From: Octopus sinensis
Lineage: Eukaryota
DNA: 64,000 nucleotides
Direction: 5' to 3'
Assembly: GCF_006345805.1 (NCBI RefSeq)
Contig: NC_043002.1
Coordinates: 74,090,001-74,154,000, forward strand
The notes beneath the pieces were generated by a model. It was not told where the DNA came from. It did no database searches and worked only from the letters and a program-made list of their open reading frames with translations. The translations under genes and the position numbers were made by a program. Positions 45,780 through 64,000 of this stretch are shown piece after piece; position 1 is the first letter of the stretch, and each line of letters begins with the position of its first letter.

Positions 45780-46012
45780 TTAATTATTTGGTTCAGCCTT
45801 ATTCAGTTCAGCTTTACTTGGTTCAATCTTATTCAGTTCAGCCTTATTTGGTTCAACTTTATTCGGTTCAACCTTATTCAGTTCAGCCTTACTCGGTTTG
45901 ACCTTATTCAGTTCAGTCTTATTCAGTCCAGCTGTAATCTGTTCCACCTTATTTGGTTCAACTTCATTTGGTTCAATTTTATTCATATTTAGATTCATTA
46001 ATTCCCTCATAT
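45780..46012 (-). CDS. Terminal coding exon with 15-bp/pentapeptide tandem repeat (MRELMNLNM-NKIEP-NEVEP-NKVEQ...NKAEP-NN*)
   Basis: Very strong acceptor ctttttattttttttttccag|AT; phase-1 entry matches the microexon; TAA at 45782-45780. Confidence 0.7.
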
Positions 46013-49000
46013 CTGGAAAAAAAATAAAAAAGTTAATTAGTTATCTAAATATCTATTGGGTTGTCAGATAAATTTGTTTCTTTTTCTTTCTTTGTACTTG
46101 GCACTCCATTACTCTGTGTAACATTTTTTTTTTAATTTTGTCTTTAGTTTCTCTTTGCTTCTATCTAGAAATCAAAGGAAATGATCACTATTCCCTTCAA
46201 ACTTTGCTTTTGTGACCTGAACATCAATGTTTTGAAACTAATCTATTTTCCATTACATTTCAAACAGCTGAAATAGCAAATATATATAGCAAATATTCTG
46301 CTCAATACCACAGATTTGCTTGTCAGTGGTTTGACTATAACCACCTGAGCATGTCCCTTAGTGGCTGACAATATGTGCATTTCTGATCATGAGTAGGAGG
46401 AGTGGGGATGTATTATAGCCATGTGTTGAGAAGGATGCTTTGAGGTTTAGATAAATGTACAAAAGCAAAGTTTGAAGGAAATATTAACTATTTTTTATAC
46501 TTTCTAGGGGTAAACAAACAAGAAATAACAGTTGCTACCAAGGACAAAAAAAAAAATGTGTTGTTATATCTGAAAAGAGGTAAACATTTTTCAAATTTCA
46601 AAATTGGTAAAAACAGAACTTGTAGAGGAAGATTAGATCTACAAAAAGAAAAAGAAAAAAAAAAAAGAAACACATAAGACACTATGATAAAAATATTTTC
46701 ATGTTAATTTAAATAATATAGTAAAGAACTTAAACAAATGGGAAAAAATGAACATGTTTACTGGATATCACAATAAACTACTTTAAGATATTCAGTGGTA
46801 AAAAAAACTCTGATGGTATTTTGGCTTAAACATTATCAAGTCAGATTTAATTGCATTTTAACAATATTCAGGATCATCCTTGTTAGAAAGTAAACTTGTA
46901 ACAAGTAGTCATGCTGGATATGTAGTTTTCTCTCCTGACATTCCGCATTCCCTTCGAATTCTCCTTGTATTTTCTCACAAGAAGGAAGTAAGTCACTTAA
47001 AGGGCTCCCATAAATACATGAGTTTATTCCAACATGATTCAAACATCCCAGTGGAATTTTACAAGGATTACAAGAAATGTAATAACAGAAGATGTATCTC
47101 CAAACATGCCACAACATTCTCCTAGTAATTAGCAATAGGCTTTTCTTCAGGTAAAACAAAAAGTGGAACTCAAGGAAATAACCCTTAAAGATAATCATCC
47201 ATTTGAGATGGGCTAATTGTTCTAATGGAGAATGTGTTGAAGGCACATGTGTGGCATAACTGCTGAGAGAGTCCCATACAGGTTTGTCCTTGCTAAAAGT
47301 CAACCACCTACTGAATCCTTTTTGGCATGCAGCCAAAGCTAAAGGCTAAAAGGACGCCACCTATAGAGGTAGCCTAAAAACACTCAACTGCCAAGAGAGA
47401 CTACTTCAACCGCGTTGTTTACAGATTGATGTAAGTAACAACTATCACCAAACTATCTGTGCTACAGACTAAACAAATGGCTAATTTGAGTTGATATTGA
47501 GTCATAACTAACAATTCATCATCATCATTTAATGTCCACTTTCCCACGATTGCATGAATTAGACTGAATTTATTGAGGCAGATTTTCTATAGCCAGATAC
47601 CCTTCCCATCACCTGTTTCCAAGCAAAGCAATATTTTCTCATAACTAGACATGTTTTTCACAGAAGGCTAGAAACGAACAACCTTGCTTCCACGACAATG
47701 ATGTTCATTTACGACCAAACTGTTATGTTAGACAAGGGTACACACAAATGCACATGTATGAACACACACGTGTGCGCACACACACATGCATGCATATGTA
47801 CACAATGGGCTTTCTGTTTACCAAATCCACTCACAGGGCTTTGGTTGACCCAGGGATATAGTGGAAGACATTTGCCAAAAGTGCAACTCAGTGAATCTGA
47901 CCCCCAAGACCACATGGTTGGGAAGCAACCATGTGGTTATAGACACCTGTGTCTATAGTTAAACATTACAAAAAGAAAAATTAAACATAAAACAAAAAAT
48001 TAATTCCAGTATGTGTTATAAATACCATTTTTTAAAAATTAATGTCTTATATATAATATTTATAGTCAAGAGAGATGACTGCACTGGTATGGCCATGTGG
48101 CAAGAATGGATGTGGATAGCTGTGTGAAAAAGTGCTGAGGGACTAGCTGCTGAGGGACCCTGTGGAAGAGGTAGACCCAGGAAGACCTGGGATGAGGTGG
48201 TGAAGCATGACCTTCAAACATTGGGCCTCACCGAGGCAATGACTAGTGACCAGGACCTTTGGAAATATGCTCTGCTTGAGAAGACTCGGCAAGCTCAATT
48301 GCTTAGTAACATGTGCCTGCCATACTTTTGCTAATTGGTTTAGGTGTCTATGTAGTTGTGAGCTGATATAAATACCCGCTTGGCTCCCTCATCTTTGACC
48401 CAGAGGCATATCTAGGATGTGACAGGTGGATGGAAAGATAACTGTACCAAAACTCAGCTCCACTACAGTTGAGAATTAAACCCACAATCTTAGAATCATG
48501 AGCTGGACATTCTAACCACCAGTCTACACACTTTTATTCACCTACATAAAAACATCCTTCAATATCAATGCATGCCATTGCATGGTATATTAATCTTAGT
48601 ATCCATCCATTCACTGGCGTCATCTTTACTACTAGGTAATCTATCCTCTTTTGATAACCTCCCTTTATCTTAAATAATAAGCAACTAGAATGTGATCAAA
48701 ATGGCTTACTTTTCAGTCCTAAATATATACTTATGTGAGATGTGGTTTCCTTTTTAGCAGTAGAAGCAATTCTCTCTAGATAAGTAGGTACTAGAAAGAC
48801 TCTTCTCTAACAAGTTAGTGACCATTAAGTCTCTGTCAAGTTAGATGAATTCCAATATAAATTAGATGTAAGTTGGCAACAAGAGGACTCTCTTTCAGAG
48901 TGAAAGGTAGACTATATGATGCTTGTGTGTGAACAGCTAATACTCCATGGTAGTGAGACATGGGCTCTGAATGCAGAAGACATGTAGACTGGAGATAAAT

Positions 49001-52000
49001 GAAGGTAGTATGCTCTGTTAGATGTGCAACATCAGTGTGCATGTACGACAAAGTGCAATGTATTGAGAGAAAAGTTGGTTATAAGAGGAATCAAATGTAG
49101 CATGCAAGAGAGAAGACTACGTTGGTTTGGACATGTGATGCAAATGAATGAGAACAGCTGCATAAAGAAGTGCCAATCACTGAAAGTGGATGGTAACTGT
49201 GGAAGAGGGAGACCCAGGAAGACATGGGATGAAGTGGTAAGGACCGATCTCAGGATGTTGGGCCTCACAGAGGAAATGACAATGGACTAAGACATCTGGC
49301 GATATGAAGCTCTTGAAAAGACCCATCCACGTCAATGAAATTGAGTTCTAGAAGTGCTGTGTGTCTCCCCCACACTTAAGAAACTTCTCACACACTCTAC
49401 TACAACAAACTAAACTACATACTCTTTTACTTGTTTCAGTCATTTGACTGCGGCCATGCTGGAGCACCGCCTTTAGTTGAGCAAATCAACCCCGGGACTT
49501 ATTCTTTGTAAGCCCAGTACTTATTCTATCGGTCTCTTTTGCTGAACTGCTAAGTGACGGGGACGTAAACACACCAGCATCGGTTGTCAAGCAATGCTAG
49601 GGGGACAAACACATACATATATATATATATATATACATATATACGACAGGCTTCTTTCAGTTTCCATCTACCAAATCCACTCACAAGGCATTGGTCGGCC
49701 CGGGGTTATAGCAGAAGACACTTGCCCAAGATGCCACGCAGTGGGCCTGAACCCAGAACCATGTGGTTGGTTAGCAAGCTCCTTACCACACAGCCACTCC
49801 TGCGCCTCTACATCTCTACATCACTTCTCTTTCTCACATTTCTTCTTTCATGCACTATGCCTGGCTCCCACTCCCCAATCCTATCCGCATGGCCCTGTTC
49901 CTCTGTATCATTGCTATCCAGTAGCTCCCCTGACTCTATATATACCCAGGTCTTTGCCACTCGCCCCACCAGCTCTCTTTAATCACACTTCCTTCGCAAA
50001 ATCCCGCCACTTATATTATGGCATTCGAATCTCAAGGGTGTGCACTGGCACTTGCCACCACCTATATTTCTCTCTTCCTTTACTCAACCATCCCATTTAT
50101 ATTCTGATCCCTGTCCCTCGTGAGTATGCCTGGCACTTTGTCACCATCTCTATCCTGCTGTCTCCTACTCCTGCACTTCCATGTATTTCCTTTGCGACCG
50201 CACCTGTTTCTGTCTTCGTTCCTGATCTCCCTTTCTCTCTCCAGCTGGGTAACCTTGTACCTCCTCGACAGCAAGACACCTGTTTCTGTCTCTCTCTCAC
50301 TATAACCTTTCATCACCCAACACATGATCACCTCCTCTCCTCTCAAAAGAATTTTTTTTGTTTTGCAAGTACTTAATGACCCTGTCAGTACAGGTGCCAA
50401 TTAAAAGCACCCAGTCCATACTATAAAGTGGTTGGCGTTTGGAAGGGCATCCAGCTGTAAAAACTTTGCCAAAACTGACCTTGCCTGTGCATGTACCATG
50501 TAAAAAGCACTAACTCCACTCTGCTGAGAGATTGGTGTCAGGAAGGGCATCCAGCTGTAAAAATCCTGCCAAAACAGTTACAGAAGTCTAATGCAGGCTT
50601 CTGCCTGGCCAACTCTTGTCAAACTGTCTCACCTATGCCAGCATGAAAGGCGGCTATTAAACGATGGTGATGATAAAGTCACAACAATAGAAGAGAAGTC
50701 ACAACACTAAAGATGGTATGGAAGTTGAAAGACACTCTTGTAAGAGTATGTTTGCCACTTGTATTTGATAGAGAAGAGGAGACAAACCTATAACACAGTG
50801 GATAGCTTAAGATTTCTCAAGAAGAACTTGGTGCCAGCCATTGATTGAAGTAAGGCATGAGATGGGGAAGTGTGGTAATAAAGCAATAAAAAGGTAAGTA
50901 GGAGTCTAAAAGACAAAGAAAAAGAATGTAATATGTTACACACTGTAACTCCAGAAGGCTACAGAAGAAATATGATGACAGATTCACTCAGTGAAGAAAA
51001 GAGCAAACATGAATGAGTTTCAAAACGTTTTATTCAATGTGATTAGATCATGAATTATTCTGAATAAAAGCATATTGTGTTTATATGAATTAGAATATCA
51101 TATAATAAAATTGTATTGGACATGACAATGGCACACTTAGTCGCAGTAACAATGAAAAGAAATAAGCATGAAAGAGGTGACTAAAAAAAGGAATATGAAT
51201 GGATATCTAATAAAGATTTATACATGTAAAGTTAATAATTAAGGACATTAAGACAAGAAAAGATGCAGGTCCATCAAAAGATAGTTGTTGAATGTTGAAA
51301 GTACTAGAATTTGCTGGTAGTTTACTAATTACCTACTAAGTTTATTAAGTGACATTATTTTCAAAAGTATATACAACGGTGACAATATCTGTAGCTTCAC
51401 ATTGTATACAAGCAACAACAGAAGCCTCAAGAATTTGGGCAAATTCAGAGAGTCTAGCAAAGTTAGAACAGTTTAGATATGATACTGTTTGGGTTTGCAG
51501 TTGAGATGGAATAACAGGTGCTACATTTTTAGTGATCCTTTCAGAAGAACTGATTTTGCTTTCACTTACCTCTAGGTTTCTCAGTGGCCTCATACACCTG
51601 AAAAAAATGAAACATAAATAAATGACTTAGAATAGTTTTTATCGATAATTTAGTATAGTCCGCAGGGGATTTTTATGGGGCTGTACCTCTGAAAATCCTA
51701 AACCTTGTGTATAATACACATCCCTTCTCTAACTTGAATCAAGGAGGTTTATATAACGTCCTTGGTTTGTAAAAATGTATACGGTAACGTCCTTTATTAT
51801 TATTGTATATATAACATAATGCAAATGTGTAGCATTTTTGTGCATTTTGTTTGCAGAAAATAAAGAAATAACAGTAATAACATTTAATAAATGTTGCTTA
51901 CTGCAAGTTATGGATGATTCTTTTATGACTTCATTGCTTTCAGGCTTAACTTAAGGTATTTTCACACCCGACATCACAAAATGCGTCTGAATAAACATTG

Positions 52001-52674
52001 CCGGACAGCAAATAGACTCTCGAACATTTCTTAGAAAATAATTTTCATTTTTAACCTTGTGTATAATACGCACTAGGGATTTTGACCTTTAAATTTTTGG
52101 GGAAAAAATGCGGATTATACTCGAAAATTTACAGTAAGTATTATGCATTATAATTCTAGAAACAAGAACCAAAGGTTTAGAACAAAATGTCTTTAGAAAA
52201 TAATAACCTAATTCTCATGGTAGTTTGTCAAGGAGCTTCAAAATCTAAAAGAGGGCAATTTTCAGTCCGGTAGTATAAAATACAACATAGCAATATACAA
52301 ATTAGTAACCAAGTACATGACATTTAAATTTTGTGTGGGAAGTTGCCGTATACAGTCTGTGGCAAAAGAGAAGATTGTGGACTTTAGAAATGACAAGCAA
52401 ACTAAAGATGTAAATGTGATATCTAAAAAACTGACAGAGAAGCAGGACTATGAATGCATTAGAGGAATGGAAGGGTTACCAATAGGGGTAGCAATAAATA
52501 GCAGTGCCGAGGCTATTCAAAATATGCATTTGTTGTAATTTATAATTATTGTTAACTAGGTGAGTTAAGAAATACTGAAGAAGGTCGAGAGAAAGTAACA
52601 ATGGTGTGCAAGTAGAGGTTCAATCTTGACATGTGTGAATGACTGCACAAAAAAAACACACACACTGAGGGAGG

Positions 52675-52710
<36 letters not shown>

Positions 52711-55700
52711 TCAAGCTAGAAAATGACCTTACATTTCAGATCGTAATGCAGAGAAGTTTAAAGGGGGAATGATTAAATGTGGAGAGCAAGCAGTATTAGA
52801 GGGAGGAAATAGGTTTGGTGGGGATGTGAGGAGTGTTGAGGCAGGGATGGGTGAAAAGGGATAAGGGAGTTATTATAATGGATCTCTGAAACCCCAGAAG
52901 CAGCTGTTGGACTATTAACACCTTACCTTTCTACCTTTAATCCTCTCTGTCATATGTACACTGTATAAGTTTGATCTGTTAATATAAATATCTATATATT
53001 TATACTTAAATATTCATTCTCTGAAAGTCTTCAGTCTTTGTTTTCTTTCTTACATTTTGTATATCAAACCCAAGCTGTTATATTTAATTTGTTTATCTGT
53101 ATAATTGCCTCCATATCCACTCACCTTGATTCTCCTTACAGCCACTCTTTACCCTGGGAAATTGGTCCCTCATAAAGACATCAGAGTTTAAGTTCAAATC
53201 ATTTGAGTGCTACGAAGTGTTTTCTATACTGAGAATCTCTGGATCTCATCCGTTGACTACACACACACACACACACACATACATCATCATCATCATCATT
53301 TAGCGTCCGCTTTCCATGCTAGCATGGGTATATATTTAATCATTATCATCATCATCATTTAATATCTGTTTTCCATGCTGGCATGTATGAGACAGTTTGA
53401 CATGACCTGTCAACCCACATGGTTGTGCTGAGCTCCAGTGTCAACTTGGCATGGTTTCTACAACTGGATGCTCTTTCTCACGGCCAACCACTTTACAATG
53501 CTTACTGAATCCTTTTTCTCATGCCAATGGCACTAGTGAGGTTGCCAAGCAACTTGCAAGATAGAAAAGGAATAGGGAAAAAAGAAAAGGAAAAAGCTCT
53601 TACTACTAAATAGGGTGGTGGCGGATATTCAAGAGAGGGATGTAGCTTTATGCCAACTATTAAAAAGCTAAAATATGATAGAGGGACAAGCAGAGGTGTC
53701 TTGTTGTAGAGGAGACATGTGGCTACCACATATTATGTAGGAGTGGGAAAGAGTTGTTGGGAACAAGATAAAGATGGTAATGATGGAGTGCCAAAACAAA
53801 CTATCAGGATAAAAGCAAATATAAACAAATTTAAATGGAAAACAATAAATTCTAATTTTTCAAAGATAATGTTTTTTTTAAATGAGAAATTTTAATACAG
53901 TTTCAATATATATTGTTTATAAGGTAACATTGACAAGAGATGAATGAAATAAGGGATGGGGGTTGCAAGTATACAGGGTGCAATGGATAAATAGGTGCCA
54001 TTTTATATTTTTAATTTCGTGTATGCACATTGTTTGTTTTTGATTTTGTCAACTACACAGTATAGTAGGGTCACTTGGGCACAGTCTGTGAGAAAAACAG
54101 CACCACAATGCAATTCACTCAGCCAGAAATTTGGAAAGAACATGCTGTGCTGCTTGGCATTTACACTGGAAGCTCCAATATGAACATTTCAGAATGATTG
54201 GGTGTCAATCTCAGGACATGTACTGAGAGTGATAAAAATCAAACACCCAGTCAACAACATGGAGTTTGGAGTGATCATTAGTGATGGTGAAGTTATGCTT
54301 CCATTCATCTTCCCATGTGGCCTCAAACTCAATACAGAAGCCTACATCAAGTGCCTGGAGGGGGTAGTACTGCTGGAAGACACTATGCCTGGCAAACGGA
54401 CTCTGCATCATACCACACAAGCAGGAGAACCCAGATATAGATGTCAGACAATTTCTGTGACTACACCATCACTAACATCTTGTCACCTAACTCCCCAGAC
54501 TGCAACCACCTTGATTACTATATGTGGGGCGCAGTTGAGTGAGAGGCCAACAAAACCCTTTGTAACACTAAAGATGAACTGAAGGCAAAGATTATGACAC
54601 CAACTTAAACAAGGAAACCGTCCAGAAAAGTTGCCGGAGAGGCCGTGGCTGAAGCCAATAGCGATTTTATTGAATAAATTTACTCTCTAGTATTTCAAGA
54701 TATTTTGGTAAATATATCTGTTAAAATGAAATGTCATTCTTTTCATTTTTGCATAATTTAGACAACAGTTTATTCACTGCACCCTATATACATACATACG
54801 TAGGTATGTATATAGGGTGTATATAGAATCAAAGGGCCTTAGAGTCAACCTAGCTAAAACCAAAGTCCTAATAAGTACGAAGGCAGGCAAACCACAAATC
54901 CCTTCAGGTAGATGACCCTGCCCAATCTGTAGTAGAGGCGTAGGTAAAAACTCTATAAGATGTACCCAGTGTAAGCTATAGATACATAAGAGGTGCAATA
55001 ATATCAAAGGAAAGCTAACTGGGAAGATAGTTTTTATATGTGGCAGATGCTTGGGAGCATTAAACTCTGAAAATGCACAGAGAACAACTTCCGCCACATT
55101 CCAGGGAGGAAAACTAGAAGTAGTTGATAGCTTCCATTACCTAGGTGATCAAGTCAGTAGCGAGGGAAGGTGCACTGAAAGTGCAGCTGCTAGAATAAGA
55201 ATAGCTTGGGCAAAGTTCAGAGAGCTCTTACCTCTGCTGGTGACAAAGGGCCTCTCGCTCAGAGTAAAAGGTAGACTGTATGACGCATGTGTACAAACAG
55301 CCATGCTACATGGCAGTGAAACATGGGCTGTGACTGCTGAGGACATGCGTAAGCTCACAAGGAATGAAGCCAGTATGATACGAGGGATGTGTAATGTCAG
55401 TGTGCATACTCAACTTTGAGAGAAAAGTTGGACCTAAGAAGCATCAGATATGGTGTGCAAGAGAGACGACTGCACTGGTATGGCTATGCGGCGAGAATGG
55501 ATGAGGATAGCTGTGTGAAAAAGTGCCACACCCTAGCGGTTGAGGGACCCTGTGGAAGAGGTAGACCCAGGAAGACCTGGGATGAAGTGGTGAAGCACGA
55601 CCTTCGAACTTTAGGCCTCACCAAGGAAATGATTAGTGACCGAGACTTTTGAAAATATGCTGCGCTTGAGAAGACCCAGCAAGCCAAATGATACCATAAC

Positions 55701-58700
55701 CTCATAGCCTATGCCAGGAGCGTAACCAGCCCACTTGTGCGTACATTTTCCTTCTTTGGAAACTAAACTCTGCTTGCGAAGACCTGTTGAGGCAAGTGAA
55801 ATCAAAATTAAACTCAAATTCGATGACTGGCATCCGTGCTAGCGGGGTGCAAAGAGCACCATACGAGTGTGTTCGTTGACAGAGCGGCTAACCGGCTTCC
55901 GTGTCAGTGGCACATAAAAGGCACCATTCGTGTGTGATCGTTACCAGCGTCGCCTTACTGGTACGTGCCCCTGCTAGTAGTATGCCAAGAACATCATAAA
56001 AGGCACCATTCGAGCGTGATCGTTACCAGCATCGCCTTACTGGCACCTGTGCCAGTGGCATGTGTAAAAAAATTCGAGCGAGGTCGTTGCCAGTACCATC
56101 TGACTGGCCCCGTACCGGCGACACGTAAAAGGCACCCACTACACTCTCAGCGTGGTTGGCGTTAAGAAGGGCATCCAGCTGTAGAAACTCTGCCAGATCA
56201 AGATTAGAGCCTGGTGCAGCCATCTGGTTCGCCAGCCCTCAGTCAAAATCATCCAACCTATGCTAGCATGGAAAGTGGACGTTAAACAATGATGATGATG
56301 ATGATATATATATATATATATATATAATTTTCATCATCATTTATTCCAAGCTGGCATAGATGGGTTTGATGGTTTGACATATTCCAATGGGTTCAAGAAC
56401 TGCATTATGCTTCAATGTTTGCTTCCTAGCACAATCGACTTTACAGTGTATACTGGTTGCTTTTTATGTGAAACCAGTGCTGCTGATGTTGCCATGCACC
56501 TTGCAAGACTATGAACCCTGAGGGAGGGGTGTTTGGTTTTATGCTAGGAAAAGTGGGATTAGAGTATGAGAGATGTGGAGGCAGAGTAGCTACTTGTAGA
56601 AGATTTACCTGTTTCCTCACATTTTGTAGAGGAGGGAGAGAATGATCAGAATGAACTGCAAAGAGATAGATAAGAGATGAGGTGTCTAGGATACTCCATG
56701 AGGTACAAAGTAAGCATAAGTGGGTGGGGTTATTGCAAAATTGTAAGAGGAGTAGAAAACAAAGGGATGGAGAGGCAGTTTGTGCAACTATAAAAGGAGT
56801 TGCTTGGGATTAAAGGGTAATAACCAATGAGTCATGAATGGGGGGGATGGATATGCAGAGGTAGGAGAGTAATGATACAGTTGACAGGAGGAGGAGGACA
56901 AAGAGAAGTCATACAGCAGGAGTAGGAGTTGAGGAGAGACAGGCATAGTGCATGACGAGCTGTAGTGTGGTCTATTGCAGGAAAATGAAACAATATAACT
57001 TGAGTGGTGAGCACATAATACACAACACCTGCAGAACTCAGTTTTGCTGAGGTAGATGGATCTTCTCAAGAACTTCACATCACTAGTCAGCCTAGTCCAT
57101 TGTCATCACCTCTGTGAGGTTCAGTATCTGGAGATCAGCCCTTGTTTTTTCCTCCCATGTTCTCTTCGTTCTCCCTCTTTTGCAAGTTCCATGCACTTGT
57201 TTATACAGCTGTCCTCAAACATACACATTACATGCACAATATGTGTGTGTGTGTATGTGTGTAGATATATGTGTGTGTGTGTGTGTGAATTATCATCATC
57301 ATCATTTAACATCTGTTGGCATGGGTTGGACAATTTGACAGGAGCTGGCAAGCTAGAAGGGCTGCACTAGGTTTCAGTCATCTGTTCTGGCAAGGTTTCT
57401 ATGGTTGGATGCTCTTCCTAACACCAACCACTTTACAGAGTTTGCTGGGTGCTCTTTACATGAAGCTGGAATGGGGACTTTTTCATGTGATGCCAACGTG
57501 GGTACCTTTTCCTGTGGCACTAGCACACGTGCTTTTTTACATAGAGCCAGCATGGGTGCACAAACACACAGCACTGGCATGGGTGCTTGTTACATGGCAC
57601 CAACACGGTGTATGTCTACATGACACCAACATAGGTGCTTTTCTATGAGCCACCAACATGGGATTGCCAGAGAAGATACTTGGCTAACCCAGTAGGGTAA
57701 GGAAGTGGAGAGAGGTGGGAGAGAGAGAGAGAAAGATAGAGACAATAAGAGTGAGAGCTGATGCATAGGGAACAGTGGAGGGGAGTATAAGTAGTAGAGT
57801 TGGGACAGAGATGTTCCATAAGCATGTGAGGGGAGATATTTAGAGATAGCAAGTGATGGTAAGAGGAACTAGAGGCCTGCAGTGGGTGGTGGTGTTTTGG
57901 GGAGATGACTTGTGGTGAGTTTTGTCAGAGGACAGGGGAGAAGGGAGTGGCTTTATGGCCATAAAGGACGTGCCTGTATGTGTGGATAGCCATGATTTTA
58001 TTTAGCATGATGTATTTTCTCAAGCACAGCAAATTGCCATACACACAGTGTACATTGATGTCTGTAGCCATGCTTACATTTGTTTATGTAACCTAGTGAT
58101 TCAACAAGCAAAAATTGATACAGTAAGTACCAAGCTTAAAATAGGCTCTAAGGTCATTCTGCTTAACAAGGTGTTGAAGATAGGATGGACATTGTTGAAT
58201 GACTGAAACCAGCAAATAAGAAAAAGAAAACAACAACTTAAAAAAAAAAATAATAATATTTTTACTTACATTAACTACATTATTGTTACCTGCTTGCATG
58301 ATGGCATTTGCAATATAAATGATGGGTTTAGGTGGTTCTTGTGATGCTATTTCATGTTCTGTATCTTTAAAATATGCTTGGATTTTTCTCGCTTTATCTT
58401 TGTCTGGTATTCGCCAATCTATTTTTCTATAAGAAGCAATTCCAAAATCGTTTGTGTTTACTTCTCCATTTGTTATAATAAATATTTTTTTTGGTGCAAT
58501 TCGAATTAATTCATCTCTCAGATGCTGAGTTTGCTCATCCTTTTGCATATTTTCTGTTATGAGCAAAATAATATAAGTACAATTTTGTGTGATATCACTT
58601 AAATGCCCAAAAAAGTTATTTTTTCTTGTCTTAATCTCCGAATATAGCATACATTTTGATACCTTGGAAATTTGGTCAACAACATCAGTAGCTAATGTCT

Positions 58701-61700
58701 CATCATCATCATGATAAAAGACACAATTACCAAATTCATGACTGTTTTTGGAGTTGGAAGAGAAAGACCCTAAAATCAAAAAGATATATATAACAATGTT
58801 ACAGTGTGTAGTGATATATAACTATTAATTAAATCTGATATTTTAATAGTGTTTTAGATAATAACAAGCATCATCATCATCATTTAACATCTATCTTCCT
58901 CGCTGGTATGGGCTGGACAATACAACGAGTGCTGACAAGCCACAGGATGGTACCAAGCTCCAATGTCTGTTTTGATATGGTTTCTATGGCTGGATGTCCT
59001 TCCTAACACAAACCACTTTACAGTGTATTGGGTGCTTTTTACAAAGCACTGGCACTAGTAAGGCCACTTGGTAACTTGAAAGACAAGACCCCTCAACTAC
59101 TGAAGGGAGTAGTATTAAGGGAGATGGCTTTTTGCCAGGTGATGAGAGGTTAAAGAAAGATAGACAAAGACAAGAACAAGTCTTTTGCTGTAGCAGAGAT
59201 ACATGGTTACCCCAGCTGGGAAAAGAAAGAGGGAGGCTGTGAAGATGTGTCAGGGTGTATCCTCAAGCTACAGCAAGGTGAATATAAGTGATATGGATGG
59301 GTAAGTAAGTTCGCAGGAGTGTGAGAGACGAGTGACAGGTGGATAGAGATAGGGTTAATAGGAAATGCAGTGAGTGGTGAACATGTGTGGAGGCATACTA
59401 GCAGACATATTAAAGTAAATCCAATATCTATCATTGGTTTTATTATTGGATAACATTAGACTTAGCATCTTGCTAACTCTAAGATGTATCTATGAGATAA
59501 TACTTTTCAGACAGGGAGCCTGAACAGCCCTTCAGCTGGTTGTGTCCTGTGAAACCATCCAACCCATGCCAGCATGGAAAATGGACGTTAAATGATGAGG
59601 ATGATGAAAGGGGCAGTAGAAAGGGGAGCAAAGCAGCAGAACTGGTAAACAGTTGGAGAAAATCTCTCGCAGTGTTTAGTTAGATATCTTTATATGTTAA
59701 GTTTTAATCTTGCTAAGATCAGCTTTACCTTTCTTCTTTTTGGGATTGAAAAAATAATTACAAGCCAAGTACTAGGGCTTATTAAAACTGACTTCACTTG
59801 TACTGACCAACTTTGTGTCCCTATAAGAAACAATGATTTAGGCAGAGAAGGGAAGGTAACTCCAATAACAGTAGCAGGTTTTTCTAGAATAGTTAGGTCA
59901 ATGTAATAGAATTCAATGTAAATTGCTGAAAGATACAAATAAACCACCAAAAAATTACTGTTTTACACAGCCTACACTTCAGACAATCAATCAATAAAAC
60001 TTCAAAGTGACAAAGAGCTCTTATGTTGTCATTTAAACCAACTTAATATCTTAATTAGACTAGGGCAGTTGGTAACAGAGAGAAAATACCATGTCCTGTT
60101 TAGTTACACTTCTTCATGTTTTGATTTTGAATTCTGACAAAGTCAACTTTACTTTTCATCCTTCTGAAGTCAATAAAATAAAATAGTAATGAAGTACTGG
60201 GGTTGGTAAAATAAAGTGCTAGTATACATATAACAAACCATATGTCTCCCCCAAAATGTGTGGCCTTGTACTCATGTTAGAAATTTATATTTTAGTTATA
60301 TCACATTGTAAGTAAAAAGACCAACACATACATTATATGTTACCAAGAAGCTTGATCTTTAAGAATAAGCAGTAACCATTATCATCAGCATCATTTAAGG
60401 TCCATTTTCCATGCTGGCATGGGTTGGACAGTTTGACAGGATTTGATGGTCCCAAAGATTGCATCATACTCCTCTGTCTGTTTTGAATGGTTTCTACAGC
60501 TAGATGCTCTTCCTAATGCCAACCACTTTACAGTATGTACTGGGTGCTTTTTCATACTACCAGCACTATTGGAGTCACTATGCTGTTTGCAAGACTACAG
60601 AGCTTGAGTAGAAAGGGGGTGCTTTATGCCAATAGCACAAGGAGTAGAGAAGAAAAAAGGATCAGAGCAGAATGGGTTTCTTGCTGAAGAAGAGCTATAT
60701 GACTATCTGTGTTTTAGAAGAGTGGATGAGAGGGGGAAGAGTTAGAAAATTGTGATAAGGTGCCAGAGTGTGAAAAATATATTGTAAGGTGAGTTTGTAC
60801 AAAGACATGTAATGAAGAGTATTAAATAAAATTAGGTCACTTGAAGATGAAATTACAATGTAACAGGCAACTTGACATACCTGAACAACGAATGTTAGAA
60901 ACAGTATTTGAACTGGTGCCTTCCATAATAATTCTATAAAAATACAAAAATAGATAAATGAAAATTAAAAGATATAAACACAAAAATTAAAAGATATAAA
61001 CACCATGTTAAAATAAAATGAATTTCTTTGAAATACTGAAAAAGAATAATATGACAAATTTTAGGGACAACAGAATTCAATTCAATTCTGAAAAAAAAGG
61101 CTAAACATATCACGTCATTATTAATTTTTGGCACTCATGGGAAGAGAATAGCAAAGGTTCTAAGGATGCTTTTCATTTAAACAATAATATTGCATAGAAA
61201 GTTATAATATCTAGTAGTTGTTGCAGAATTATTCATACTTGAATAATTACCTGAAACAATACCTTCTGGTTGGTTTTCCTGTTTGTTGTTGCTATAAGGA
61301 GGATAAACATCATACACAAACACACACATATAATGTGTGTGTGTGATCATCATCCTCATTTAATATTCCACTTTATCATGGATCAGACAGAATTTGTTGA
61401 GGCTGGTTTTCAACAAGTGGATGCCCTTTCTGTTACCAACCCACATCGGTTTCCAAGGTAATACTTCCTCACTACCAGATATGTTTTTCATGGAAGACTG
61501 AAAATGAACAACCTCACTTGTTGGATGATAATGCGTTGTCAGCTAATGCTGAGTTATAATGATCCTTATTTACGAGTATATTAAAAATTTCTTGACTACA
61601 TGAAAGGTAATTAATTCTATGCTGAATATTTTTAACTAAGCAATTTAAGATTGTTTTAGGATAATTACTTTCAAAATTTATATATGTCAGCTTTGGATTG

Positions 61701-62299
61701 GATTTATGATATGGTGCATGGTTCCTGTGAGTAAATTAAGATTAACATCTAGAAAATTTACTGAGCTGTGATAATTTCCAACTGAAATCTTAAGACCAAA
61801 CCTATTGAAGCCTCTATGAAATATTTTCTTATAATTTTCTAATATTCTATTATTAGTAGTTTTAGTAATAAATAATGTATCGTCCTGATATAGGCTGCTA
61901 CCTATTTCTGGGAAGTCACTATTAAACTTATGCAGTATATATATTCCTACAATATAGGTGACTTGCACCGAATCAATCAAGCCCATAGCTATGTCAAAGT
62001 AATCAGGTGTGTCCTTCCTAGTCCAGTATTTATTGTTAAATTTCATTAATGATTTACATGCTGTAAGTATAATATTAATTTCCTGGTAAGACAAGTTAGT
62101 ATGATGCTTAGTAAAGATGAGGCACTATTTGGTACTATGGGGTTTATTGAGGAGTAGTAATCATTTATATCGACATCTATAAATATGTCTATCCTTATTA
62201 TCAATTCTATTGAACTACTTGATTACTTCACAATATCTTACCCTAATTACATAATGTCCCTCATCAAATAATTTCCAAATTGCAATCTGTCCCTCTTGA
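45780..62299 (-). CDS. TIR-domain + RHIM-motif protein with C-terminal pentapeptide repeat (TRIF/TICAM-like architecture), 5'-partial; join complement(62299..62242,61291..61251,60933..60881,58769..58270,51597..51570,46012..45780)
   Basis: Six GT-AG-bounded exons with intron phases 0,2,1,0,1 give one open frame: 913 nt = 1 nt + 304 codons including stop. The large exon encodes a TIR-like pattern (CVFYHDDDE...LSDITQNCTYIILLITENM...ARKIQAYFK), then IIYIANAIMQAGNNNVVN. Confidence 0.75.
48065..48300 (+). pseudogene. RTE LINE ORF2 C-terminal fragment
   Basis: Homologous to 55440-55680 (RLHWYGH...DSCVKKC...RGRPRKTWDEVVKHDL). Confidence 0.8.
48790..49330 (+). pseudogene. RTE LINE ORF2 fragment (older subfamily)
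   Basis: LATRGLSFRVKGRLYDACV...QERRLRWFGHVMQMNENSCIKKC...GRGRPRKTWDEVVRTDL, with stops and frameshifts. Confidence 0.85.
49425..49810 (-). mobile_element. Well-preserved family B SINE
   Basis: cttttacttgtttcagtcatttgactgcggccatgctggagcaccgcc...ccttaccacacagccactcctgcgcct. Confidence 0.9.
50385..50675 (+). mobile_element. Family A RTE-tail repeat with internal duplication
   Basis: ggaagggcatccagctgtaaaa occurs twice; ends gcatgaaaggcggctattaaacgatggtgatgat. Confidence 0.8.
51570..51597 (-). CDS. 28-nt microexon (VYEATEKPR-D)
   Basis: Acceptor tttcatttttttcag; donor GAG|GTAAGT; phase 0 in and 1 out bridges the TIR exon and the terminal exon. Confidence 0.72.
51642..52137. mobile_element. Non-autonomous Tc1/mariner (pogo-like) element, ~500 bp
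   Basis: Right end tgcggattatactcgaaaatttacagta; degenerate left end agtatagtccgca; internal cttgtgtataatac repeats. Confidence 0.55.
53974..54786 (+). mobile_element. Internally deleted Tc1/mariner (DD37D/maT-like) transposon
   Basis: TA|CAGGGTGCAATGGATAA...TTATTCACTGCACCCT|; transposase remnants MQFTQPEIWKEHAV, HPVN.MEFGVIISDGEVMLPFIFP.GLKLNTEAYIKCLE and PNSPDCNHLDYYMWGAVE, with frameshifts. Confidence 0.88.
54815..56300 (+). mobile_element. 5'-truncated RTE-clade LINE: RT C-terminus, Cys/His module, 3' UTR and (GAT)n tail
   Basis: KGLRVNLAKTKVL...KLEVVDSFHYLGD...ARIRIAWAKFRELLPLL...LHGSETW...RGRPRKTW; stops at 54913 and 54979, frameshift near 55416; tail gcatggaaagtggacgttaaacaatgatgatg. 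Confidence 0.92.
57295..57660 (-). mobile_element. Family A RTE-tail repeat with degenerate ~21-bp tandem array
   Basis: (CAT)n-ttaacatctgttggcatgggttggac...; repeated atgg(g)t.c.tttt..atg units at 57465-57660. Confidence 0.75.
58270..58769 (-). CDS. TIR + RHIM exon (500 nt, phase 1 in, phase 0 out)
   Basis: Acceptor ttttgattttag|GG and donor AAT|GTAAGT lie inside the 228-aa ORF 58093..58779. The ORF tail after the donor (KNIIIFFFKLL...) is T-rich intron. Confidence 0.88.
58868..59060 (-). mobile_element. Family A RTE-tail repeat
   Basis: catcatcatcatttaacatc...tggctggatgtccttcctaacacaaaccactttacagtg. Confidence 0.8.
60881..60933 (-). CDS. 53-nt exon (R-IIMEGTSSNTVSNIRCS-G); contains a possible in-frame ATG at 60926
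   Basis: Long polypyrimidine acceptor ttcatttatctatttttgtatttttatag; donor CAG|GTATGT; phase-1 exit fits the TIR exon. Confidence 0.8.
61251..61291 (-). CDS. 41-nt exon (QQQTGKPTRRYCF-R)
   Basis: Acceptor tttatcctccttatag; donor CAG|GTAATT; open in the frame required by the downstream exons. Confidence 0.6.
61687..62094 (-). pseudogene. Penelope-like element reverse transcriptase fragment
   Basis: FDIAMG..DS..V..IVGIYILHK...SLYQDDTL (YxDD-derived)...GLKI...VNFLDVNLNL.TG, a PLE RT pattern. Confidence 0.82.
62242..62299 (-). CDS. 58-nt exon (QEGQIAIWKLFDEGHYVIR)
   Basis: Acceptor tatatttgtag; donor AGG|GTAAGA; the only open frame of three is the phase-compatible one. Confidence 0.55.
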
Positions 62300-63189
62300 C
62301 TACAAATATATATATATATATATATATACATGTTTCATACCATTTGCTAAAATAATTTTTTTCCAATCTGTATCTCTCTTATATCTTGTTGCAAAGGCTA
62401 TTCCCTACTATTTCTCTTACTAGCTTAGGGCAAAGTCTGCCATCTTCATCCATTTCCGGCTGTCACCTCCACACCTGTTCCCCCACCTCTCAGACTTTTA
62501 TTAGTTTATTCCATGTGTTTGGCCGTTTCATGACACTTGAAAATATGCACAGCCAAGCTAAGAATTTCTCTTGCTATTTTTAAATGCTTCATTCATTCAA
62601 ACTCGTCTATTCTCTAAAATAATTCGTTCTTGTTTGTTCTGCCCCTAAAATGACTAACCTTGTTTCTTGGCTACATGTATATACACATTTTGTACTTTTC
62701 TCTAAAATAATTCTTTTTTGTTTGCTCTACCCCTTAAAGTGACTTTTCCGTGTCTGTGGTCGCACCCACCCTTTCCCAGCCCCACCACCAATACCAGAAA
62801 TCTCTTTCTCTCACCGGACATCCAGTTGCCCTTTCTCTATCTCTTCTTATATTGGTAATCTTGCCACCCTTTCCTTTCTCACCCCATCCCACATCTCTGG
62901 ACTAACTAAACCAGATAGCAGCCCACTTACCACCTCTCTCTCTCTTTTCTTTTTTTTCTCCACTTATATCTGTAGCATCAGTAATGCTTACACCCACAGT
63001 GCTCATAATGCTTATATTAATGCTTATATTTACAATGCCCCAAACACTTTCATATACAATGCTTCCTTACTCCCACTCCTCAGTAGAGGCAACAACTTTA
63101 ACAATTCTAATGTATGAATGACGGTAGATTAAAAGCAAGAACAACTATTATGACGTCTGTTACCAAATGATCATGGGAACCTTCTTTAC

Positions 63190-64000
63190 AGGTGTTGAAT
63201 AGCATCTCTCCTTCCTGTGTTACCTCCTATATCTCTTTCCTAGTTTTCAGAGTTGGCACTGTAAATGTAGGCACATTGAAGGGTAGGTCTAACGAGAGTG
63301 TCAAGATGCTTGAATGGAGATGTATTGATGTATGTTGTGTACAAGAGGTAAGGTGGAGAGGAGCTTCAGCTAGAGTTCTCACAGGCAAAGCAATAGGTAT
63401 AAACTCTTCTGGGAAGGTAATAGTGATGAAATAAGGGGTGTGGGCATACTTCTTGCAGAGAAATGGGTAGATAAGGTCATAGAGGTAGTGAGGGTGTACA
63501 ATAGAGTGATTAAACTCAGGCTAGTCTTGCAGAATGGTATAGCTACAATTATCTCTGCCTACGTCCCACAAGGGGGCTTATCAAATGAACAGAAGGATCA
63601 CTTTTATGATATTCTTCTGCAGGCTACCCCAAAGATGAGTGACAATGATCTCATCTTTGTGGCTGGAGATTTTAATGGGCATGTCAGATAAAGTCATAGA
63701 GGTTGTCAGAGTATGCGATAGAATACTTAAGCTCATTTTTATGATACCCTTCTACAGGCTACTTCAAAGACAAGTGGCAATGACCTTATCTTTGTGGCTG
63801 GAGATTTTAATGGGTATGTTGGGTGGCAATCTGGTATCTTCACTAGCATACACGGGGGCCATGGTATTGGTTCCCGAAATGATGAGGGAACTAAGCTACT
63901 GGAGTTTTGTGATGCATGTTGTAACCTTTTAATCTGCAACACTAACTTCAGGAAGCCAGATAGCCACATGATAACCTATCAATCAGGTGACTCTGCTAGC
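63190..64000 (+). pseudogene. RTE LINE apurinic-endonuclease domain with internal duplication; runs off the window
   Basis: RVGTVNVGTL.GRS...DVCCVQEVRWRG...GILLAEKWVDKVIEVVRV...IISAYVPQ...FVAGDFNGHV; frameshifted. Confidence 0.9.

What the first reader, a model, noticed from the sequence alone, without database searches (positions are those of the whole stretch)
45780..62299. TRIF/TICAM-like TIR-RHIM adaptor gene hidden in large repeat-filled introns
Seen: six phase-compatible exons give xQEGQ...CSG-[TIR-like: EFGNCVFYHDDDETLATDVVDQI...LSDITQNCTYIILLITENM...ARKIQAYFK]-EHEIASQEPPKP-[IIYIANAIMQAGNNNVVNVYE]-pentapeptide repeat. Established: TIR followed by RHIM is the architecture of vertebrate TRIF/TICAM1, which couples TLR3/4 to RIPK1/RIPK3; TICAM-like adaptors are described in amphioxus. 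As recalled, human TRIF has LQDAIDHSAFIILLLTSNF and ARKVANTFK, which parallel the two quoted segments. Inference: this is a MyD88-independent, RHIM-amyloid-based immune or cell-death adaptor in a probable cephalopod. I am not aware of this being characterised, but cannot check.
Basis: partly seen in the sequence, partly recalled or inferred. Interest (0 to 1): 0.85.

Follow-up and report, generated by a model that had tools for sequence, protein, structure and literature searches.

The report
Fast-evolving octopus TIR-domain adaptor gene
This is a real but uncharacterised Octopus sinensis gene for a small, very divergent TIR-domain (innate-immune signalling) protein that evolves faster than the surrounding non-coding DNA. 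Its claimed RHIM cell-death motif fails every RHIM test I could run, so it is at most a RHIM-like sticky segment.

Summary
The window is Octopus sinensis chromosome DNA, 100% identical to GCA_006345805.1. The finding is RefSeq gene LOC115213021, annotated "uncharacterized protein" (268 aa, no Pfam domain on record). Four minus-strand coding exons reproduce that protein exactly: 60926-60881, 58769-58270, 51597-51570 and 46012-45780.

The TIR call holds at fold level:
- Two AlphaFold models give mostly TIR hits in Foldseek.
- A tandem paralogue in other octopods nearly reaches the Pfam TIR_2 cut-off.
- A family profile picks human TRAM (TICAM2) as best solved TIR, weakly (E 0.007-0.04).

The RHIM call does not hold:
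- No Pfam RHIM match and no match to any solved structure.
- The core tetrad reads MQAG in Octopus and has no equivalent in Argonauta.
- The TRIF N-terminal domain, pLxIS and TRAF6 motifs are absent.

What is conserved is an uncharged N-x5-G-x-N-x-V-x-N segment just after the TIR, then a K/E/P pentapeptide tail of 10 to 37 units.

New here: the TIR exon differs 15.8% between two Octopus species against 5.8% for flanking non-coding DNA, which suggests an arms race.

Best reading: an octopod-restricted, rapidly evolving TIR adaptor or regulator.

The parts
60881..60926 (-). Coding exon 1 (MEGTSSNTVSNIRCS + first base of the Gly codon); annotated start codon at 60926
   Evidence: Exact match to P0007/XP_029637778.1. 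The donor is GTTCAG|gtatgt. The 159 bp upstream (60927-61085) are 80% conserved in O. bimaculoides.
58270..58769 (-). Coding exon 2 (500 nt): the whole TIR-like domain, a linker and the conserved uncharged motif
   Evidence: Acceptor ttttag|GG and donor AAT|gtaagt. It is the only region of the window with relatives in a 1.84-billion-protein scan. It is a single exon in Argonauta and O. bimaculoides too.
58366..58731 (-). TIR-like domain (P0007 residues about 29-150)
   Evidence: AlphaFold2 gives alternating strands and helices, with core pLDDT 70-92. Foldseek top hits are mostly TIR domains, at E about 1e-4 to 1e-3 and TM 0.5-0.65. Pfam TIR_2 is sub-threshold at E 0.012-0.09. hhalign to the tandem TIR_2-like paralogue gives 83.5% probability, E 8e-6.
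58270..58323 (-). Conserved uncharged segment IIYIANAIMQAGNNNVVN (P0007 residues 165-182; it continues as VY in exon 3).
   Evidence: It is the longest charge- and proline-free run in the Octopus proteins. N170, G176, N178, V180 and N182 are invariant from Octopus to Argonauta, while the preceding linker is not conserved. AlphaFold pLDDT is below 50. No Pfam RHIM hit and no RHIM tetrad.
51570..51597 (-). Coding exon 3, a 28-nt mini-exon (VYEATEKPR + first base of the Asp codon)
   Evidence: Acceptor tttcag|GTG and donor AGAG|gtaagt. Orthologous mini-exons are VFGATEKPR in O. bimaculoides and LPGAPERHT in Argonauta. Reading on into the intron gives ..PRGK-stop, which is the ending of an O. vulgaris model (P0005).
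45780..46012 (-). Coding exon 4 with stop codon: MRELMNLNM plus the [NS]K[VAI]E[PL] pentapeptide-repeat tail
   Evidence: Acceptor ttttccag|AT. The 15-bp tandem array lies at 45784-45985. There are 10 units here and 37 in O. bimaculoides; Argonauta has none and ends in an acidic tail instead.
62240..62299 (-).
   Evidence: It is absent from all predicted proteins and has no ATG. It lies within window 61086-64000, which has no match in the 10 kb upstream of the O. bimaculoides gene. It is next to the ORF at 61690-62124, which has no Pfam hit.

Best explanation
LOC115213021 encodes a small soluble cytoplasmic TIR-domain protein, found so far only in octopods (Octopus and Argonauta). It most likely acts as an adaptor or regulator in TIR-based innate-immune signalling.

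Proposed mechanism:
- The divergent TIR domain joins signal-induced TIR-TIR assemblies with Toll-like receptors or other TIR proteins.
- The conserved uncharged N-x5-G-x-N-x-V-x-N segment directly after the TIR serves as a beta-strand-type homotypic contact. It is RHIM-like in composition and position, and possibly amyloid-like. Its role would be to stabilise the oligomer or recruit a partner.
- The K/E/P pentapeptide tail is a disordered spacer of variable length.

Shown here: the gene structure, the TIR fold, the conserved motif, the variable tail and the accelerated protein evolution.
Inferred: the immune role, the partners and any amyloid behaviour.
For: Gene structure:
- The gene model matches RefSeq exactly.
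- The open reading frame and exon layout are kept in O. sinensis, O. vulgaris, O. bimaculoides and Argonauta.

TIR fold:
- Two AlphaFold models have core pLDDT 70-92.
- The top 42 Foldseek hits of model 1 are TIR domains (MAL, TcpB, SPARTA, TLR5, BCAP, TRAM, TIR-1, SARM1, MyD88). Model 2 also gives mostly TIR hits.
- A head-to-head tandem paralogue in O. bimaculoides and Argonauta scores Pfam TIR_2 at E 1.2e-5 and 3.8e-4.
- That paralogue aligns to this family over the whole domain (hhalign 83.5% probability, E 8e-6).
- Family profiles hit the TRAM TIR best among all PDB sequences.

Localisation: no transmembrane segment and no myristoylation signal; a signal peptide was not scanned for specifically.

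Motif: it is conserved across octopods while the linker before it is not.

Arms-race signature, O. sinensis versus O. bimaculoides:
- Exon 2 differs at 15.8% of sites, against 5.8% for 11.9 kb of aligned non-coding DNA (Fisher p 2e-14).
- dN is 0.186 against a non-coding K of 0.061 (p 3e-13).
- dN/dS is about 1.5.
Against: - No family member reaches Pfam's TIR_2 cut-off. This gene scores 14.6 bits against a cut-off of 28.
- The AlphaFold alignments hold only 4-6 sequences, and TM-scores are only about 0.5-0.65.
- Some CheY-like receiver folds appear among the hits of the second model.
- I had no expression or interaction data.
- dN/dS alone is not significantly above 1 (p 0.27). The selection argument rests on the comparison with non-coding DNA.
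- No other protein with a similar motif was found, although that search was very limited.
- The neighbouring genes (a REEP-like TB2/DP1/HVA22 gene, Exo70) are not immune genes.
Confidence: 0.55

Rival explanations
1. One reading: a true TICAM/TRIF-type adaptor whose C-terminal motif is a genuine RHIM. It would form amyloid with a RIPK-like partner and drive NF-kB or cell-death signalling independently of MyD88.
For: - TIR followed by a Q/G/N-rich uncharged segment flanked by disordered sequence mirrors the TIR-to-RHIM order in TRIF.
- The best sequence hit among solved TIRs is TRAM, with TRIF also listed once.
- Three of the six fixed positions of the published RHIM motif are kept in Octopus: Q, G and N at G+3.
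- RIPK1-like proteins with canonical RHIMs exist in other spiralians (PMC12119088).
- Divergent RHIMs are reported in invertebrates (PMC4262963).
Against: - No Pfam RHIM hit for any of the three species sequences tested.
- No PDB RHIM chain is hit by the motif or by its profile.
- The tetrad is MQAG in Octopus and is not alignable in Argonauta (YVQG). The published tetrad and motif both fail.
- VQSG and TQIG variants are inactive in RIPK3, and spiralian RIPK1 keeps the canonical tetrad (PMC12119088).
- The Asn upstream of the tetrad appears shifted by one residue relative to canonical RHIMs. This rests on my recollection of those sequences and was not tested.
- No TRIF-NTD, pLxIS or TRAF6 motif.
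- TICAMs have been traced back only to amphioxus, whose TICAM lacks a RHIM (PMC9440496).
- The TRAM hits are marginal, and Foldseek does not favour TICAM.
Confidence: 0.12
2. An enzymatic TIR. The domain would cleave NAD+ or make a nucleotide signal, like SARM1 or prokaryotic and plant TIRs. The C-terminal motif would supply the oligomerisation that such TIRs need for activity.
For: - A Glu in the helix after the third strand (LRDEL, LRSEL, HEL, REL) appears in both paralogue families. From my general knowledge of the WxxxE(L) region of NADase TIRs, that is where their catalytic Glu sits.
- SPARTA, SARM1, TIR-1, AbTir and TIR-STING are among the Foldseek hits.
- Bacteria have TIR2 domains with a C-terminal amyloid signalling motif (bioRxiv 10.1101/2020.01.06.895854).
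Against: - The equivalence of that Glu was not verified on a structural superposition.
- Many non-enzymatic TIRs keep the same Glu.
- The best sequence matches are to non-enzymatic adaptors.
Confidence: 0.15
3. A TIR-only decoy or negative regulator. The conserved segment would be only a structural strand or linker with no amyloid or recruitment function, and the repeat tail would be evolutionary noise.
For: - The protein is small and has no recognisable effector-recruiting motifs.
- The tail varies from 0 to 37 units, and some gene models drop it altogether.
- Rapid evolution fits a regulator that pathogens target.
Against: Five positions of the segment are invariant across octopods, in a region AlphaFold predicts to be disordered. 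That argues for a specific binding function.
Confidence: 0.15
4. A decaying or spurious gene: a neutrally drifting open reading frame picked up by gene predictors.
For: - dN/dS of about 1.5 is not significantly different from 1.
- Pfam finds no domain.
- Only three relatives turned up in 1.84 billion proteins.
Against: - The frame is intact, the splice sites are canonical and the intron positions are conserved in four species, including Argonauta.
- The exon changes about 2.7 times faster than non-coding DNA, which neutral drift cannot produce.
- The model folds as a TIR.
Confidence: 0.03

Closest known systems
TRAM / TICAM2 (vertebrate TLR4 bridging adaptor) TIR domain
   Same: - It is the best sequence match among all solved TIRs (2m1w, 9dki, 9dlg; E 0.007-0.04).
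- The shared pattern is ..(I/V)LHAEDD..A.. / ..HL..L.. / ..ILLLTENF..D...
- Both belong to the Pfam TIR_2-type class (PMC9440496).
- Both are small proteins consisting mostly of a TIR domain.
   Different: - Identity is only about 15%, and the E-values are marginal.
- There is no N-terminal myristoylation signal.
- TRAM has no conserved C-terminal uncharged motif or repeat tail.
- Foldseek ranks TRAM only 6th to 11th.
TRIF / TICAM1
   Same: - The order is the same: a TIR, then a short uncharged Q/G/N-containing segment within a disordered region.
- There is one weak profile hit to the TRIF TIR (2m1x, E 0.29).
   Different: - There is no TRIF-NTD, pLxIS or TRAF6 site.
- The RHIM tetrad and the extended motif are not met, and there is no Pfam RHIM hit.
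- The protein has 268 residues. Human TRIF is far longer; its RHIM motif alone sits at residues 687-695 (PMC9440496).
Divergent invertebrate RHIM-like motifs (Drosophila IMD and PGRP-LC/LE; amphioxus RHIM proteins)
   Same: - Short beta-prone motifs are attached to innate-immune domains.
- They deviate from the vertebrate consensus (PMC4262963).
- A strictly conserved Gly is followed by an Asn and then apolar residues.
   Different: - Homology to those motifs could not be tested here. Only Pfam's RHIM model and PDB sequences were available, and both gave nothing.
- No cephalopod or TIR-linked example came up in the papers I read.
Bacterial TIR2 proteins with a C-terminal amyloid signalling motif (BASS), paired with NLR-like genes
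   Same: The architecture is an effector-type TIR followed by a short C-terminal amyloid-type motif (bioRxiv 10.1101/2020.01.06.895854).
   Different: - No adjacent NLR-type gene carries a matching motif.
- This is a eukaryotic spliced gene.
- Similarity of the motif to BASS motifs was not tested.
Lineage-specific TIR-domain proteins of molluscs
   Same: It is an orphan TIR-domain protein of unknown function in a mollusc. TICAM orthologues are reported absent there, and many uncharacterised TIR proteins exist (PMC9334734).
   Different: - It is too divergent for Pfam to detect.
- It is restricted to octopods in a 1.84-billion-protein scan.
- It carries a conserved post-TIR motif and a pentapeptide-repeat tail.

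Membership tests
TIR domain superfamily | Flavodoxin-like alternating strand/helix fold that superposes on solved TIR domains | tested here: met
   Two AlphaFold2 models have core pLDDT 70-92. The top 42 Foldseek PDB hits of model 1 are TIR domains, and model 2 also gives mostly TIR hits. E is 1e-4 to 1e-3 and TM normalised to the target is 0.5-0.65. Confidence is moderate because the alignments are shallow.
TIR domain superfamily | Sequence match to the Pfam TIR or TIR_2 model above the curated cut-off | tested here: not met
   TIR_2 scores 13.7-14.6 bits for this gene (E 0.047-0.09; best family member E 0.012) against a cut-off of 28. The tandem paralogue scores 26.2 and 21.4 bits and links to this family by hhalign at 83.5% probability.
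TICAM (TRIF/TRAM) family | TIR domain closer to TICAM TIRs than to other TIR classes | tested here: inconclusive
   The profile search of PDB sequences gives TRAM as the best TIR (E 0.007-0.04), then Hydra TRR2 at 0.11 and TRIF at 0.29. Foldseek shows no TICAM preference. No phylogeny was possible.
TICAM (TRIF/TRAM) family | TRIF N-terminal domain, pLxIS motif and TRAF6-binding motifs (for TRIF) | tested here: not met
   Only about 28 residues precede the TIR, and Pfam finds no TRIF-NTD. The regexes [NDQEKR]LxIS and PxExx[FYWDE] are absent in all three species tested.
RHIM | Core tetrad (V/I)-Q-(V/I/L/C)-G (PMC9444067) | tested here: not met
   Octopus has MQAG, which fails at positions 1 and 3. 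Argonauta has YVQG at the aligned position. No tetrad occurs anywhere in the four proteins.
RHIM | [quoted passage not shown] | tested here: not met
   No match in P0007, P0006, P0008 or P0003. Octopus keeps Q, G and N only. Argonauta keeps the Gly and the last apolar position.
RHIM | Match to the Pfam RHIM model or to RHIM-containing solved chains | tested here: not met
   The exon and the isolated motif fragments give no RHIM hit at E up to 10. The motif and its profile hit no RHIM chain in the PDB. Sensitivity for so short a motif is low.
RHIM | Short uncharged beta-prone stretch within disordered flanks | tested here: met
   It is a 20-24-residue charge- and proline-free run, the longest in the Octopus proteins. 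pLDDT is below 50 over residues 137-175 of the modelled fragment, which covers the motif and both flanks.
RHIM | Forms amyloid and binds another protein carrying the motif | not testable with these tools
   This needs fibril and co-assembly assays and a scan of the octopus proteome. A word-based search with the motif region found no other protein.

The most novel reading that the evidence does not exclude
Octopods have a TICAM-like adaptor in which a TIR domain is wired to a RHIM-like amyloid-forming segment and is locked in an arms race with pathogens. That would mean one of two things. Either TIR-plus-amyloid signalling of the TRIF type predates the protostome-deuterostome split, or it arose again by convergence in cephalopods.
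Probability: 0.12. Interest if true: 0.8.

Novelty: new member of a known kind. Interest (0 to 1): 0.4.

Why it matters
MyD88-independent (TICAM) signalling and RHIM-based amyloid signalling are generally treated as chordate or vertebrate inventions, and TICAM orthologues are reported missing from molluscs (PMC9334734, PMC9440496).

This gene gives cephalopod immunology a concrete, testable candidate. It is a previously unrecognised TIR protein that database pipelines do not label. Its weak nearest relative is TRAM, it has a conserved post-TIR self-association candidate, and its protein evolves about three times faster than neutral DNA. That pattern marks genes in conflict with pathogens.

Even if the RHIM idea fails, it would be a tractable entry point into octopus TIR signalling. 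It is also an example of how fast-evolving immune domains escape profile-based annotation.

Tried and rejected
- phmmer of the exon against PDB sequences gave only chance hits to poliovirus VP1 at E above 0.2.
- Profiles of the 4-sequence family and of the 2 paralogues alone gave no TIR hit in the PDB. Only the combined profiles reached TRAM.
- P0004, a 668-aa repeat protein (E 1e-4 over 26 residues), was rejected as a low-complexity chance match.
- A profile word-search for more relatives returned only the family itself.
- A motif-region search for partner proteins returned only the query's own cluster.
- tblastn found no second copy of the TIR exon in the window. It found no counterpart of the tandem paralogue in the window or within 10 kb upstream. 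By synteny with O. bimaculoides, that paralogue probably lies just beyond.
- Intronic ORFs gave no credible Pfam hits. A Pertussis_S2S3 hit at E 0.06 is noise.
- The supplements of PMC12119088 held no octopus RIPK1 entry.
- No paper on cephalopod TIR-DC families was found.
- A TIR phylogeny was not attempted. No reference TIR sequences could be fetched, and identities are about 10-18%.

Full report
**1. What is in the sequence**

The region is AT-rich eukaryotic DNA with few long ORFs. It is bounded by a good acceptor (ttttag|GG at 58769) and a consensus donor (AAT|gtaagt after 58270).

A full HMMER scan of 1.84 billion representative proteins with this exon found only three real relatives:
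- A 100% match, Octopus sinensis LOC115213021, annotated 'uncharacterized protein'.
- A 68% match in O. bimaculoides, misnamed 'kinX-like' or 'sporozoite surface protein 2-like' because of its repeats.
- A 36% match in Argonauta hians.

Cluster look-up added the 268-aa isoform X1 (XP_029637778.1) and two O. vulgaris models.

Joining window 60926-60881, 58769-58270, 51597-51570 and 46012-45780 gives an 807-nt CDS. Its translation equals isoform X1 exactly, and every junction is AG/GT. The window is 100% identical over 28,221 bp to GCA_006345805.1 chromosome CM016864.1.

The two further upstream exons are not supported. The CDS begins at the ATG at 60926. Only 159 bp upstream of it are conserved in O. 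bimaculoides. The rest of the window upstream (61086-64000) has no counterpart within 10 kb of the O. bimaculoides gene. That stretch holds an ORF that looks like a reverse-transcriptase fragment by eye but has no Pfam hit. The introns are indeed full of interspersed repeats, and exons 1-3 are unique.

**2. Is the domain a TIR?**

By sequence alone it is borderline. Pfam TIR_2 gives E 0.012-0.09 and 14-15 bits against a cut-off of 28, although the match spans nearly the whole model. Three independent lines raise this to a confident fold assignment.

(a) AlphaFold2 with a 4-sequence and then a 6-sequence alignment gives alternating strands and helices, with core pLDDT 70-84 and 81-92. In Foldseek against the PDB, the top 42 hits of model 1 are all TIR domains. 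They include MAL, TcpB/BtpA, SPARTA TIR, TLR5, BCAP, TRAM, TIR-1, SARM1 and MyD88. Model 2 gives mostly TIR hits with a few CheY-like receiver folds mixed in.

(b) In Argonauta and O. bimaculoides a second small gene lies head-to-head a few kb upstream (about 5 kb in Argonauta, about 9 kb in O. bimaculoides). It scores TIR_2 at E 3.8e-4 and 1.2e-5, the latter at 26.2 bits over model positions 3-120 of 122. hhalign links it to this family across the full domain at 83.5% probability, E 8e-6.

(c) A combined 6-sequence profile searched against all PDB sequences gives human TRAM/TICAM2 TIR as the best hits (E 0.018-0.038). Hydra TRR2 follows at 0.11 and TRIF/TICAM1 at 0.29. A profile of the N-terminal half again gives TRAM, and only TRAM among TIRs, at E 0.007-0.015.

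This is a real but marginal signal. I rate 'TIR' at about 0.9 and 'TICAM-class TIR' at about 0.2-0.25.

**3. Is the motif a RHIM?**

The segment is IIYIANAIMQAGNNNVVN-VY in Octopus and NVVYVQGANSVINL in Argonauta. It has these properties:
- It is the longest charge- and proline-free run in the Octopus proteins.
- It sits in a region AlphaFold leaves disordered.
- It ends exactly at a conserved intron.
- It keeps N170, G176, N178, V180 and N182 invariant, while the 15 residues before it are unconserved.

It is therefore a constrained short linear motif. However, every RHIM membership test I could run fails:
- There is no Pfam RHIM hit at E up to 10, either for the exon or for isolated motif fragments of three species.
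- Neither the motif nor its profile matches any PDB chain with a RHIM.
- The defining tetrad (V/I)-Q-(V/I/L/C)-G (PMC9444067) reads MQAG in Octopus and has no equivalent in Argonauta.

The literature makes these deviations matter. The tetrad is highly conserved even in spiralian RIPK1-like proteins, and single changes such as VQSG or TQIG abolish NF-kB activation by RIPK3 (PMC12119088).

On the other side, divergent RHIM-like motifs are known in invertebrate immune proteins (PMC4262963). A Gly followed by Asn and apolar residues is the part that paper calls structurally critical. My verdict is that the segment is RHIM-like in composition and position but is not demonstrably a RHIM.

**4. TRIF-specific features**

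- Only about 28 residues precede the TIR, and there is no TRIF-NTD.
- There is no pLxIS motif, no TRAF6 motif, no myristoylation signal and no transmembrane segment.
- TICAMs have been traced back only to amphioxus, whose TICAM lacks a RHIM, and they are reported absent from molluscs (PMC9440496, PMC9334734).

**5. The tail**

The last exon encodes [NS]K[VAI]E[PL] units. There are 10 in O. sinensis and 37 in O. bimaculoides. Predicted 'isoforms' differ by whole multiples of the repeat unit, and Argonauta has none, ending in a short acidic tail. The tail is a charge-balanced spacer, presumably disordered (it was not modelled), that evolves by repeat slippage. One O. vulgaris model ends by reading on from exon 3 into the intron (..PRGK-stop) and lacks the tail.

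**6. Evolutionary rate (new observation)**

Between O. sinensis and O. bimaculoides:

| Sequence compared | Differences | Divergence |
|---|---|---|
| Exon 2 | 78 of 494 aligned sites | 15.8% |
| 600 bp of intron on either side | - | 6.6-7.3% |
| Aligned non-coding DNA across the locus | 692 of 11,856 sites | 5.8% |

The exon differs from the locus-wide non-coding DNA with Fisher p 2e-14. Nei-Gojobori estimates are dN 0.186 and dS 0.122, so dN/dS is about 1.5. The non-synonymous rate is about 3 times the non-coding rate (p 3e-13).

dN/dS by itself is not significantly above 1 (p 0.27). An exon that changes faster than its own introns cannot be explained by relaxed constraint, though. The frame, splice sites and a scaffold of invariant residues have survived since the Octopus-Argonauta split.

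This is the signature of recurrent positive selection, typical of genes in host-pathogen conflict. It also explains why profile methods barely see the TIR.

**7. Mechanism**

Most likely (0.55) this is a cytosolic TIR adaptor or regulator that joins TIR-TIR assemblies. The post-TIR segment would act as a homotypic beta-type contact, possibly amyloid-like, and the repeat tail as a spacer.

Rivals:
- A genuine TICAM/RHIM adaptor (0.12).
- An NAD+-cleaving TIR whose conserved helix Glu (..RDEL..) would be catalytic; the equivalence of that Glu was not checked structurally (0.15).
- A decoy or negative regulator whose motif is merely structural (0.15).
- A decaying ORF (0.03).

**8. Novelty**

The gene is already predicted in four genomes but carries no name, domain or literature. 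I file it as a new, highly divergent member of the TIR-domain proteins. It has an unusual, lineage-specific architecture and a tandem paralogue.

It is worth testing but is not established.

Noticed in passing
L003:813-1367 (-) in O. bimaculoides; L002:4378-4776 (-) in Argonauta hians: A second small TIR-like gene sits head-to-head upstream of the orthologue in both species. It scores Pfam TIR_2 at E 1.2e-5 and 3.8e-4, and hhalign to this family gives 83.5% probability. It has no RHIM-like tail. No counterpart was found in the window or within 10 kb upstream in O. sinensis, so it probably lies just outside.
   Followed up: partly
window 58270-58769 compared with L003:13285-13784: The TIR exon is 15.8% diverged between O. 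sinensis and O. bimaculoides, while flanking and locus-wide non-coding DNA is 5.8-7.3% diverged. The exon therefore evolves about 2.7 times faster than its introns (p 2e-14).
   Followed up: yes
window 61086-64000 (and on to about L001:3124): About 6.7 kb upstream of the start codon has no match in the O. bimaculoides locus. It looks like a lineage-specific insertion. It includes an ORF at 61690-62124 (-) that looks like a reverse-transcriptase fragment by eye (..YQDD..) but has no Pfam hit.
   Followed up: partly
window 45784-45985: The coding 15-bp minisatellite changes copy number between species (10 versus 37 pentapeptide units). RefSeq 'isoforms' X1 and X2 differ by exactly 15 residues inside it, which looks more like repeat-length variation or an alignment artefact than true splicing.
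   Followed up: partly
window 50388-50676, 53282-53541, 56104-56325, 57289-57476, 58862-59063, 60373-60566: A roughly 200-bp interspersed element, SINE-like, translates as ..NPCQHGKWTLNDDDD.. in one frame. It recurs up to 11 times in the window, in both orientations, within the introns.
   Followed up: no
window 51570-51562: Reading through the donor of the 28-nt mini-exon gives ..PRGK-stop. An O. vulgaris model (CAI9724215.1, 193 aa) ends exactly that way, which suggests an alternative tail-less isoform.
   Followed up: no
L001:32438-35147 (-); L003:27542-31713 (-): The downstream neighbour in both Octopus species is a TB2/DP1/HVA22 (REEP-like) gene. In Argonauta the upstream neighbour is Exo70. 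Apart from the TIR paralogue, the locus is not an immune-gene cluster.
   Followed up: no
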